From: Macrostomum lignano
Taxonomy: Eukaryota
Direction of reading: 5' to 3'
Assembly: GCA_002269645.1 (NCBI GenBank)
Contig: NIVC01001194.1
Span: forward strand, 62,001 to 126,000
DNA length: 64,000 nt
Position 1 is the first letter of the stretch. Each line of letters starts with the position of its first letter. Of this stretch, positions 43,501 through 46,500 are shown piece by piece. The notes under the pieces are model-generated. The model was not told the origin of the DNA, did not search any database, and saw only the letters and a list, made by a program, of their open reading frames with translations. A program made the position numbers and the translations under genes.

Positions 43501-46500
43501 CTCGTTCAACTGATCGATGCTGCAGTCGCCTGCAGTAAATCAATTTGGAAGTAAATTAAGCTAAGCTACCACCAAAGCATCATTACAAGCGCAATTTTCA
43601 TACGTAACACGTATTTGATTTGTCTTCGGTATGTCGTTGGATTGCATAGTGCATTGATGTGTTTTTTGTGTGTGGAAATCGAGTAGCAGAATCAAAGCTT
43701 CTGAGATTTTCTACAATCGTATGGTATCGACGATAATTACATGTAACCTAACTCGCGGATAAAACGAAAAAAGTTTTTTTCCCTTTGCAAATCTGCTAAA
43801 GATGGAAATTTATCTCAGTAACGATTAAATCTATGGGTAAGTTCCACTTCTAGGAAGTGGGTATCGATGAGGACAGCTAATTGTGGTGTGTGTTTATCGC
43901 AGGTAGTAAGACTGCCGTGCTCATGCGTTCGTGTGTGGATATGCGCAATTGGGGAGTAAAAATACGAGATAAATTGATTGAAAAATTGATTGAAAAAGTT
44001 TTTGGCTGCTTTTGAAAAAGGTTTTTCATGATTAGGTGTAGAAAATCCGTAGAGTAAACTCAGGAGCGCAACGTACTTGTACAGCCAAATAGCACACTGC
44101 AGTCAGGCTGTATTTCTTGCTTTAAAATAATAGTTAGCTCGTATTTTGCCGTGAACTTTCGGCGAAACAAAAATAATTTTACGGCAAAAAAATAAAAACG
44201 GGTAGAGAGCAGTGGGTGCACATAAGGTCAGAAAATTTTGCGAAGTAGAATTCCGATTCAGGGGTGGCTTTCATCGCATTTAAACTGAAGAGCTTGAGAT
44301 GGGATAGTTACCAATTTAACTGGGCTTACCACGAACTGAAATAAGGCGAGAGTTGCAACTATCAGGTTGTTAATATAGTCAGTTGAGAGTTACAACAGGT
44401 GAATAAATACTTGAGGCTGGCTCCTAAACAATTGAAATAGCCATTATGCACGCTTTTCCGTTGTGTAAGTATCAGAACACAATTTTAAGTCATAATGCAC
44501 AAGGATTGACTTAAAGATTCGTCCAAAACTTGAGTAAGCAAGTTGATGATTTTCTAATAAAGGAAACTAGAAGTAAATATTTCGGGGGAGTTAAAAGCAA
44601 CAAACTACTGTAAGAGTATTCGGCACCTGTCAGAGAAGGCTAATGTTTGTTTATATAGATTCGTGTACATATAGGCACAGAAACAGAAATTCAACTAATA
44701 CAACAGTTGATCCTATCACTGAAATATAAAATTAAACTAATTCTAGAGTTTTAATGAATCCGTCTCTCTCTTACCTTCTGTCTTTATCTTCAAATTTGTC
44801 CGTACTAAAGCGAACAACGTGGCATTGAACATGACGGTGCCGTCAGAGTTGAGTGGCATGTTCATGGAGACCAGACGCTGAAACGTTTAGGAATGTAAGG
44901 CAAATTATTACAGCAATTTCATGATGGGAAGACACTTTGAGGTTGGCTGCTCTAGGACGGTTTGTGGACAGTTTGGAGAAACTCTGCCATAATCAAGCCT
45001 GCTTAGGCTTACTTGCTGGAGCAGCATCATCTAAGTAGGCCACTAAATTCTGCACCAATTGAATCAGCCAAGGCATTATAGCGTACCTTGCATATTTTAC
45101 GATGCGGACAAAGCTTTCCGAATCCCAACGGTGGATCGATTTTTCTTAGCAGAGTCACCACGTCGAGATGCTTGATTCGACCTCTGTAAAATGTAGCATG
45201 GATCAATGCGATATTTCTTATTGCGTAATTTCACTGCGGGAAATCTGAGTGTAAAAATGAGAAAATGGCATTCATAGTTAGAGCTCACTTGGCACTAGGG
45301 TCGTATTCAGACCAAAGGCGGACAAACTCGTCCAGATGATGCGGCCCAAGAATTGACCAGTCCCGGGTCAGATAGTCGAAGTTGTCCATAATTACAGCAA
45401 CGAATAAGTTGATAATCTGGAGACGAGTATTATGGACGGGTTATTTTTAGTGCTCTAAATTATTTATTTACATGCAACTACACGTTAGTCACAAATAGGC
45501 ATGCGATATTTTTCGCTATGTAGAAAAGGTACTTTCACCTCTCGAATGGGCTTTTGAAGTATAAATTGGTAACAATAAAAACAGCAAGTTTAATAATAAA
45601 ACCTTTGATTCCATCCCCAACCTTGAGACCTGGAGCATTGCATAAAAAGCAAAAACTGTGCATTTCACCCTCACCAATTACGAGGCAGTTGGTAATTAGA
45701 ATTGCGCACCAATCACCGATCAATCTGGATTTCTTACCAAAAATGAGCACAAGGTTATAAATGTAACAAAAAAGGGGTAGGCAATGTAGCTGTGGCAGCT
45801 CGGCTCGGGCAAGCCACTTAGATTTCGAGTCGCCTCCCATTCCAGGTAGCTGTCGCTGCGATAATCGCACTTGGCATCGACTGAGTCCATTTGTTTTTTA
45901 AAGGGGAGGGGGTGAGGGGTATCGTGACAATAGCTGCTGGTAATTTGAAACTCACCAGAAATGAGCACACCATGTAGAAGCTGATAAAGTACGGATACGC
46001 TATCGGACTGCCGCAGCTGGTCTCCTGACCAAGGGCTGACTTGTTTAGCAGAAGCACCTCGCCAGGTGAAAAGGTGCGGTTTAGAGACATCACGTGGTGC
46101 CTAATCTGTTGGGTGAACTCTTCTTTGTAGGCCTGGTAGCTGTCACTGGCTTTATCGCACAGCACTGATGGGTCTAAAAAACCCCAGCAATGTAGAGAAT
46201 TGGTGGCGCTAGTTTTACTGAACTTTATTTTGGTTGCAGCACTTCGATCGTAGGTCTTTTTCAAAACATAACCAAAAATTTAATACTAAAAATGTCACAA
46301 AATATGTAAAAACTGTATAGGTTAGAAATATTTGACAAATTTCAAATAGAACTTCCTCAAGAAGATGGTTCACACCACCGTCAAATGGGTCATCAGATTG
46401 AACGATGTATGTGAAAAGCTGTCCTGCTTTGTGTGCTAGTCATGTGATTGATCTTATTTGATAGCGGTGTATAAAATGAGAACTATGCAAATAAACTTGC

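What the first reader, a model, noticed from the sequence alone, without database searches (positions are those of the whole stretch)
45738..46173. Cav1 has two mutually exclusive IVS6 exons: one L-type (FISFYM), one Cav2-like (FVTFIT), a possible splice switch for pore pharmacology and gating
Seen: between the constitutive P-loop IV exon (ends ..LLDCVS, phase 1) and the [13 protein letters not shown] exon (phase 0) lie two homologous exons, 75 nt apart. A (218 nt) reads [34 protein letters not shown]; B (143 nt) reads [33 protein letters not shown]. Both have canonical splice sites and the same 1-to-0 phases, and including both would frameshift. Established: in Cav1.2 the IVS6 Tyr-Met pair (Y1463/M1464, FISFYMLC) contributes to dihydropyridine binding and the Tyr also to phenylalkylamine binding; drug-insensitive Cav2 channels read FVSFIFLCSFL here. 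The well-known vertebrate Cav1.2 mutually exclusive pairs are in IS6, IIIS2 and IVS3, not IVS6. Inference: one gene makes a classical L-type isoform and an isoform with a Cav2-like S6 and a 25-aa shorter extracellular loop, changing drug/toxin sensitivity and possibly inactivation. I know of no described IVS6 exon switch, but I cannot search the literature.
Basis: partly seen in the sequence, partly recalled or inferred. Interest (0 to 1): 0.88.

Follow-up and report, generated by a model that had tools for sequence, protein, structure and literature searches.

The report
Alternative pore-helix exons in flatworm Cav1
A flatworm (Macrostomum lignano) L-type calcium-channel gene carries two tandem, apparently mutually exclusive versions of the exon for the last outer pore loop and the upper half of pore helix IVS6; both look maintained by selection, and one changes residues that bind dihydropyridine drugs in mammals, but no RNA evidence of their use could be obtained here.

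Summary
On the minus strand, exon A (46173-45956, 218 nt) and exon B (45880-45738, 143 nt) are homologous. They lie 75 nt apart, have AG/GT sites and share the same phases. Including both or neither breaks the frame.

The window is Macrostomum lignano contig NIVC01001194.1, and the gene is a Cav1 alpha-1 subunit. No public gene model examined splices this region as proposed here.

Both exons look functional:
- A second, 98.4%-identical gene copy keeps both exons intact. All three differences in B are synonymous (P about 0.006-0.009 if neutral).
- A-class exons (long loop) and B-class exons (short loop) also occur in other M. lignano Cav1 paralogs. The duplication therefore predates the paralog split.

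The "Cav2-like S6" reading is only partly right. FVTFIT occurs only in this gene's B exon; B exons of the paralogs keep FISFY. B has the Cav2-typical Val and Ile but lacks the invariant Cav2 Phe. The difference conserved across paralogs is the extracellular loop.

A mollusc Cav1 locus has a single IVS6 exon, and about 115 protostome Cav1 models show no isoform difference in this region. No paper found describes an IVS6 exon switch. No transcript evidence could be obtained.

Verdict: a new variant of a known kind (mutually exclusive exons in Cav channels), of moderate interest.

The parts
46601..46808 (-). Constitutive exon: IVS5 plus P-loop IV (ALPYVALL...[18 protein letters not shown] plus 1 base). 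Donor GTAGGA, ends in phase 1.
   Evidence: Exact spliced alignment. 100% identical to public M. lignano Cav1 models P0212 and P0333.
45956..46173 (-). Exon A (218 nt, 73 aa). Long extracellular loop (domain IV L6) with two Cys and two N-glycosylation sequons (NRT, NKS), plus the N-terminal part of IVS6 with the L-type motif [15 protein letters not shown].
   Evidence: The sister copy L003 is identical in protein, with one synonymous difference. An A-class ortholog is present in paralog model P0214/P0340. Donor strong, acceptor weak on the gene's own splice-site matrix.
45881..45955 (-). 75-nt intron between A and B (GTGAGT...CAG). It lies within the range of the gene's other short introns (81-93 nt), so splicing A to B is not excluded by size.
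   Evidence: intron lengths.
45738..45880 (-). Exon B (143 nt, 48 aa). Short loop with two Cys and one sequon (NLS), plus the N-terminal part of IVS6 reading [15 protein letters not shown]. In rat Cav1.2 numbering this is I1460V, S1461T, Y1463I, M1464T.
   Evidence: Three differences from the sister copy, all synonymous. B-class orthologs are present in P0039 and P0214/P0340. Acceptor above the gene's median, donor weaker.
45289..45416 (-). Constitutive exon: C-terminal part of IVS6 ([13 protein letters not shown]...) and the start of the C-terminal domain. Starts in phase 0.

Best explanation
Exons A and B are an old tandem duplication of one Cav1 exon. That exon encodes the extracellular loop between P-loop IV and IVS6, plus the outer two thirds of IVS6. 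They are used as mutually exclusive alternative exons. Each productive mRNA carries exactly one, because both start in phase 1 and end in phase 0, with lengths of 218 and 143 nt. Joint inclusion gives a stop inside B, and joint skipping frameshifts. Such mRNAs would be non-productive and presumably removed by nonsense-mediated decay (inferred). The 75-nt intron between them is not too short to splice by this gene's standards, so choice is more likely regulated than sterically forced (inferred).

The two isoforms differ in two ways:
1. The outer-vestibule loop. A has a 25-aa longer loop with two glycosylation sequons. B has a short loop of about ancestral length. This difference is conserved in other M. 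lignano Cav1 paralogs and is probably the original purpose of the switch.
2. The IVS6 residues, in this gene only. These residues face the III-IV fenestration. B replaces the L-type Ile, Tyr and Met that contribute to dihydropyridine and phenylalkylamine binding in mammalian Cav1.2.

Shown here: the anatomy, the frame logic, the age of the duplication, its retention in paralogs, and recent purifying selection on B. Inferred: actual alternative use, its regulation, and any effect on permeation, gating or drug sensitivity.
For: - Anatomy, phases and open frames with either exon.
- The window is M. lignano NIVC01001194.1 (100% match to L002). The gene is Cav1 (92% to P0212; PDB Cav1.1 and Cav1.2 are the top matches; Ion_trans scores 97.5 and 98.4 bits for the two isoforms).
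- The duplication is old and constrained. dS is saturated (about 2.4) and dN is 0.48, and 12 of 25 conserved residues use different codons.
- Retention in paralogs. Model P0214/P0340 contains an A-class and a B-class exon in tandem, and P0039 uses a B-class exon. In the alignment the exons fall into two classes by loop length and motif, and both loop Cys are invariant. The paralogs are only 85-86% identical in the conserved domain IV.
- Recent purifying selection. The sister copy L003 is 98.4% identical over 15 kb. Exon B shows 3 substitutions, all at third positions of Thr codons. Exon A shows 1, also synonymous. Flanking introns carry substitutions and indels, and the splice sites are untouched. 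The probability of 3 out of 3 being synonymous under neutrality is 0.006-0.009.
- The same gene has a second such pair in IIIS3. There, transcript-derived NCBI models use one version in this gene (P0332) and the other in a paralog (P0335). This gene family therefore does appear to use mutually exclusive exons.
- Drug-site mapping.
Against: - No transcript or junction evidence for A or B could be obtained with these tools.
- No public model examined uses full-length A or B in this gene. P0212 and P0333 use a truncated A.
- The Tyr replaced in B is Tyr or Phe in 90 of the 103 distinct Cav1-type sequences sampled. B's S6 has changed much more than the B exons of the paralogs, which could reflect relaxed constraint.
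- The synonymous-only test rests on three substitutions.
- The paralog evidence comes from automatic gene models, not from their DNA. The closest paralog's A/B region could not be reached, because L001 ends 378 nt after its P-loop exon.
Confidence: 0.75

Rival explanations
1. Exon B of this gene is an unused relic of the duplication (a pseudo-exon). Only A is spliced in. B's unusual S6 (FVTFIT) reflects drift after loss of function.
For: - B breaks the near-invariant Cav1 Tyr/Phe and differs from the paralog B exons at 5-6 of 14 S6 positions.
- No public model of this gene includes B.
- B's donor is on the weak side for this gene.
Against: - B has an open frame, intact AG/GT sites and both loop Cys. 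It keeps AYP.F and CSFL despite saturated synonymous divergence from A.
- All 3 differences from the sister copy are synonymous and there are no indels, whereas neighbouring introns have indels.
- B-class exons are kept in three gene lineages.
Confidence: 0.12
2. Both exons are used, but the switch matters only for the extracellular loop (glycosylation, the vestibule, and access of ions, toxins or partner subunits). The S6 changes in B are functionally minor, so there is no pharmacology or gating switch of the kind the first reader proposed.
For: - The loop-length difference is the only feature shared by all A-class versus B-class exons. Paralog B exons keep FISFY[IV].
- Nematode Cav1 has Phe at the Tyr position yet is DHP-sensitive (PMC2362100).
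- Decapod Cav1 has Thr at the Met position.
- Extracellular L5 and L6 loops alter permeation and block in invertebrate Cav3, according to the abstract of PMC7382465.
Against: - Y1463, M1464 and I1460 are all listed as DHP determinants. The same paper reports that changes at several IVS6 drug-site residues disturb ion flux (PMC2362100).
- An aliphatic Ile at the Tyr position was in no Cav1 sampled, but in 46 of 57 distinct Cav2-type sequences.
Confidence: 0.3
3. The public model is right. The exon is a shortened A that uses an internal acceptor (LLDC|[34 protein letters not shown], as in P0212 and P0333). Neither full A nor B is used.
For: Two UniProt models (A0A1I8I3D7 and A0A1I8HUI0) have this junction.
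Against: - It needs a donor GTTAGC and an acceptor ...ggcgag|G inside exon A. Neither resembles this gene's splice sites.
- It deletes the first of the two Cys and the CD..SD.Y motif, which are invariant across the aligned Cav1 sequences.
- Sibling models from the same annotation disagree with each other: one reads through the donor, one skips both exons, one includes both. That is typical of a gene predictor forcing a frame across a duplicated exon.
Confidence: 0.03

Closest known systems
Vertebrate Cav1.2/Cav1.3 mutually exclusive exons 8/8a (IS6)
   Same: A tandem-duplicated, mutually exclusive exon pair in a Cav1 gene that encodes an S6 pore helix. The two versions differ in dihydropyridine sensitivity (PMC3596553).
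   Different: It lies in domain I, not domain IV, and is an independent duplication. In mammals IVS6 is constitutive. The flatworm pair also swaps a whole extracellular loop.
Invertebrate NALCN exons 15a/15b (domain II P-loop to proximal S6)
   Same: Mutually exclusive duplicated exons covering pore elements up to the proximal S6 of a four-domain channel. They are present in flatworms and change the character of the pore (PMC3557258).
   Different: It is a different gene family and a different domain. It switches the selectivity-filter residue (E/K). Here the selectivity filter lies in the constitutive upstream exon and is unchanged.
Invertebrate Cav3 exons 12a/12b (domain II L5 turret), and the cysteine-rich D4L6 loop of Cav3
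   Same: Alternative exons, or loop variants, that change an extracellular pore turret and with it ion passage and block (abstract of PMC7382465). The Cav3 tandem-exon event is conserved in arthropods, nematodes and molluscs (PMC9741552).
   Different: It is in the Cav3 family. The alternative exon is in domain II, and no S6 residues are exchanged.
Other tandem-exon substitution events in Cav genes of human and Drosophila
   Same: The Cav family is strongly enriched for such events. Ten independent events are reported, each affecting a different exon (PMC9741552).
   Different: The text of that paper does not name an IVS6 event. About 115 protostome Cav1 models, including multi-isoform RefSeq sets, show no isoform difference in this region.

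Membership tests
Mutually exclusive tandem-duplicated exons | Two adjacent homologous exons in the same gene and orientation | tested here: met
   A and B are 75 nt apart. Reciprocal tblastn gives E = 2-4e-6, and 25 of 48 aligned residues are identical.
Mutually exclusive tandem-duplicated exons | Both exons have usable splice sites and the same entry and exit phases | tested here: met
   Both have AG/GT sites and go from phase 1 to phase 0. Site scores are within the gene's range except for A's weak acceptor.
Mutually exclusive tandem-duplicated exons | Including both or neither destroys the reading frame (or is otherwise prevented) | tested here: met
   Including both gives a stop at 45820-45818. 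Including neither gives a frameshift with an early stop.
Mutually exclusive tandem-duplicated exons | Both copies are maintained by selection or conserved in relatives | tested here: met
   A-class and B-class exons occur in other paralogs. Differences from the sister copy are synonymous only, 3 of 3 in B with P about 0.006-0.009. The test is limited to one species.
Mutually exclusive tandem-duplicated exons | Transcripts contain exactly one of the two | not testable with these tools
   No read data are available. The transcript-derived 1588-aa NCBI model that spans the site could not be retrieved.
Cav1 (L-type) calcium channel alpha-1 subunit | Four-domain channel with a GPHH/IQ C-terminus, whose closest relatives are Cav1 | tested here: met
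   Top hits are Cav1 proteins with Pfam Ion_trans, GPHH and Ca_chan_IQ. The best PDB matches are Cav1.1 and Cav1.2, ahead of Cav2.
Cav1 (L-type) calcium channel alpha-1 subunit | L-type IVS6 signature: F-I-S-F-Y/F-x-L-C-S/A-F-L followed by I/V-I-N-L-F | tested here: met
   The A isoform has it: [11 protein letters not shown]|IINLF. The B isoform does not, because of Val, Thr, Ile and Thr, although it keeps IINLF.
   B has the Val and the Ile. It has Thr instead of the invariant Phe (57 of 57 distinct Cav2-type sequences). It keeps the Cav1-typical Pro and the L-type IINLF. It resembles Cav2 at two positions only.

The most novel reading that the evidence does not exclude
One Cav1 gene makes two channels by exon choice. 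One is a classical L-type channel. The other has a remodelled III-IV fenestration side of IVS6 (Y->I, M->T, I->V) and a short, less glycosylated outer loop. This second isoform is expressed in different cells and has clearly different inactivation, different permeation, and loss of dihydropyridine and phenylalkylamine sensitivity. It would be a natural splice switch of the L-type drug receptor site.
Probability: 0.3. Interest if true: 0.7.

Novelty: new variant of a known kind. Interest (0 to 1): 0.5.

Why it matters
Mutually exclusive exons are a recurrent way of tuning four-domain channels. I found none described for IVS6, and IVS6 is constitutive in mammalian Cav1.2. IVS6 carries part of the receptor site for dihydropyridines and phenylalkylamines and takes part in inactivation.

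If both isoforms are expressed, the pair is a natural experiment. It would show what the conserved IVS6 Tyr/Met pair and the domain IV outer loop do for the channel itself. To my knowledge M. lignano can be made transgenic and has RNA-seq resources, so this could be tested (own knowledge, not checked here).

There are also practical consequences. Every public model of the four M. lignano Cav1 genes that I examined is wrong or truncated at this site. Any channel phylogeny, cloning or drug-target work on flatworm Cav1 that relies on those models would inherit the error.

Tried and rejected
1. Searching the protein database with the spliced B isoform and the spliced A isoform. No same-species protein came back, because short queries only retrieved short proteins. 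The loop of A has no close match anywhere (best 52%).

2. Retrieving the transcript-derived 1588-residue NCBI model. Its coding sequence starts at window 52285 and must contain either A or B.
   - An exhaustive search with the C-terminal tail exon returned only P0341, which starts just after IVS6.
   - Rebuilding the tail by GT-AG path search with the length constraint gave from 68 to hundreds of solutions, compatible with either exon.
   - The look-up tool refuses spliced sequences.
   - I abandoned this route.

3. Reaching the A/B region of the closest paralog. Locus L001 ends 378 nt after its P-loop IV exon, about 50 nt short of where exon A would start. P0039 and the UniRef-only models have no contig on record.

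4. Other phyla. The Adineta protein is not on record. The Solemya velum locus has a single IVS6 exon, and its CSFL|IINLF intron has no second copy.

5. Intronic base-pairing that might enforce exclusive choice. Only short, AT-rich inverted repeats were found, none convincing, and there are no related sequences to test covariation.

6. Steric exclusion by a too-short intron. Rejected, because 75 nt is close to other introns of this gene (81, 88, 89 and 93 nt).

7. Assembly artefact. Rejected, because the same arrangement is present in an independent contig (L003) and in paralog models.

Full report
**Observation**

The gene lies on the minus strand. The P-loop IV exon (46808-46601) ends with ...LLDCVS plus one base. 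Exon A (46173-45956, 218 nt) and exon B (45880-45738, 143 nt) follow, separated by a 75-nt intron. The next exon starts at 45416 with [13 protein letters not shown].

An exact spliced alignment of the known protein, with either A or B inserted, reproduces all flanking exons with GT-AG introns and an open frame. The length from HVVQC to SILK is 671 aa with A and 646 aa with B. With both exons included, a stop arises inside B at 45820-45818. With neither, the frame is lost.

A and B are homologous:
- Reciprocal tblastn gives E = 2-4e-6.
- 25 of 48 aligned residues are identical.
- 12 of those 25 are encoded by different codons.
- dN is 0.48 against a saturated dS of about 2.4.

**What the locus is**

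A query built from the gene's exons hits Macrostomum lignano "voltage-dependent L-type calcium channel subunit alpha" (P0212) at 92%. After that come protostome Cav1 proteins. Locus L002, from GenBank contig NIVC01001194.1 of assembly GCA_002269645.1, matches window 64000-46128 at 100%. The best solved structures are Cav1.1 and Cav1.2, ahead of Cav2. Both isoforms score the same on Pfam Ion_trans.

**Public models are inconsistent at this site**

- P0212 and P0333 splice LLDC to an internal point of exon A (VLLLNKS...). This uses sites unlike any other in the gene and drops a conserved Cys.
- P0334 reads through the donor.
- The models of a paralog (P0213, P0336) skip both exons.
- The models of another paralog (P0214, P0340) include an A-like and a B-like exon one after the other.
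- P0039 joins the upstream exon directly to a B-like exon.

This is what gene predictors do with an unrecognised mutually exclusive pair.

**Evidence that both exons are real**

1. *Paralogs.* Aligned together, the M. lignano exons fall into two classes.
   - The A class has a long loop. It comprises the window's A and the A-like exon of P0214. Both end [18 protein letters not shown].
   - The B class has a short loop with Y.EW/DW...EP.C. It comprises the window's B and the B-like exons of P0039 and P0214.
   - The four gene lineages are 85-94% identical in the conserved domain IV. The duplication is therefore older than the split of at least three of them. Both loop Cys are invariant.

2. *A sister copy.* Contig NIVC01001457.1 (L003) is 98.4% identical over 15 kb and carries both exons.
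   - Exon B differs at three positions, all third positions of Thr codons.
   - Exon A differs at one position, also synonymous.
   - The neighbouring constitutive exons show only synonymous differences.
   - The introns carry substitutions and indels, and the splice sites are unchanged.
   - If B were neutral, three synonymous hits out of three would have a probability of 0.006-0.009.
   - This is a small sample, but it argues against a dead exon.

3. *The gene family uses such pairs.* IIIS3 is also encoded by two homologous 107-nt exons (56322-56216 and 55433-55327). Transcript-derived NCBI models use one version in this gene (P0332) and the other in a paralog (P0335).

**What differs between the isoforms**

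*The loop.* A has 73 aa with sequons NRT and NKS. B has 48 aa with one sequon. B's length is close to that of other Cav1 channels (38-42 aa in the aligned outgroups). A is therefore the derived form in the loop.

*The S6 helix.* A has the canonical FISFYM. B has FVTFIT. Aligned to rabbit Cav1.1, the Ile and Thr of B fall on Y1365 and M1366. In rat Cav1.2 numbering the changes are I1460V, S1461T, Y1463I and M1464T. I1460, Y1463 and M1464 are listed dihydropyridine determinants. The other three listed residues (I1470, I1471, N1472) lie in the constitutive downstream exon (PMC2362100).

*Comparison with other channels.* Among 103 distinct Cav1-type sequences the Tyr position is Y (63), F (27), V (5) or Q (2). 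It is I in 46 of 57 distinct Cav2-type sequences. The position after it is an invariant Phe in Cav2, but Thr in B. Decapod Cav1 also has Thr there. B keeps the Cav1-typical Pro. B is therefore a Cav1 exon with two Cav2-like substitutions, not a Cav2-like S6.

*Specificity.* FVTFIT is found only in this gene. The B exons of the paralogs read FISFYI and FISFYV. The conserved purpose of the switch is therefore the loop. The S6 change is a later, gene-specific addition, and its two Thr codons have since accumulated only synonymous differences.

**Mechanism**

Exclusivity of productive mRNAs follows from the frame (shown). Removal of A+B or neither-exon mRNAs by nonsense-mediated decay is inferred. 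The 75-nt intron is similar to other introns of this gene (81-93 nt), so steric exclusion is unlikely. No convincing intronic pairing was found. On the gene's own splice matrices, A has a weak acceptor and a strong donor, while B has a good acceptor and a weaker donor. This is compatible with regulated choice but proves nothing.

**Distribution**

A mollusc Cav1 locus (Solemya velum, L004) has the same CSFL|IINLF intron position but only one IVS6 exon. About 115 protostome Cav1 models, including many RefSeq isoform sets, show no variation within a species in this region. Other flatworms could not be examined.

**Literature**

- In mammalian Cav1.2 the drug-binding segments other than IS6 are constitutive. 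The mutually exclusive pairs are 8/8a (IS6), 21/22 (IIIS2) and 31/32 (IVS3) (PMC3596553).
- Human and fly Cav genes have ten independent tandem-exon events, each in a different exon (PMC9741552).
- NALCN exons 15a/15b run from the P-loop to the proximal S6 of domain II and are present in flatworms (PMC3557258).
- Full-text searches found no IVS6 exon switch and nothing on Macrostomum Cav splicing.

**Limits**

No transcript evidence could be obtained. A transcript-derived 1588-residue NCBI model spans the site, but it could not be retrieved or rebuilt. The closest paralog's A/B region lies just beyond the fetched locus. All comparative evidence is from one species.

**Verdict**

It is very probably a real mutually exclusive exon pair at a position new for Cav channels. 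The "Cav2-like pharmacology switch" reading is plausible for this gene, but it is not the conserved feature of the switch and is untested. Interest is moderate.

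Noticed in passing
window 56216-56322 and 55327-55433 (minus strand): A second pair of homologous exons in the same gene, 107 nt each, both running from phase 0 to phase 2. 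They encode the IIIS2-S3 linker and IIIS3 ([36 protein letters not shown] versus [36 protein letters not shown]). Transcript-derived NCBI models use the first type in this gene (P0332) and the second type in a paralog (P0335). One paralog model (P0213) wrongly contains both.
   Followed up: partly
window 48426-49559 (+), inside the 3.4-kb intron between the IVS3 and IVS4 exons: An intact 377-aa ORF for a mariner/Mos1-type transposase (Pfam Transposase_1, DDE_3, HTH_48). The segment 48330-49622 is absent from the sister gene copy L003, so it is a recent insertion in this copy.
   Followed up: partly
window 52737-54608: A 1.87-kb AT-rich intronic segment that is present here but absent from the sister copy L003. 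It contains short repeated CPLTDAF/GKWTE-type ORF fragments. It may be another insertion or deletion polymorphism.
   Followed up: no
window about 57900-58232 (minus strand), in the intron before the IIS6 exon: Open frames made of a repeated [21 protein letters not shown]-like unit in all three frames. This points to a tandem DNA repeat inside the intron.
   Followed up: no
L003 (NIVC01001457.1) versus window 31375-58551: The whole 3' two thirds of the gene exists as a second copy, 96.6-99.9% identical depending on the aligned block. Between window 44000 and 37500 there are almost no differences, compared with 1-3% elsewhere. This could be gene conversion, or allelic or homeologous collapse.
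   Followed up: no
window about 38504-38531, 40160-40327 and 40889-41044 (minus strand): There is alternative 3' structure. Model P0341 splices SILK directly to the RNHSLF exon and ends in a short terminal exon (AYRSSTTL*). It skips a candidate exon with the conserved Cav1 motif [21 protein letters not shown] (40327-40160) and another at 41044-40889. A longer 1588-aa annotated product implies further downstream exons, down to about 31587.
   Followed up: partly
public proteins P0212, P0333, P0334, P0213, P0336, P0214, P0340, P0039: All examined M. lignano Cav1 gene models are wrong or truncated at the IVS6 exon pair. The errors are a truncated A, read-through of the donor, both exons skipped, both exons included, or the model ending at CSFL.
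   Followed up: yes
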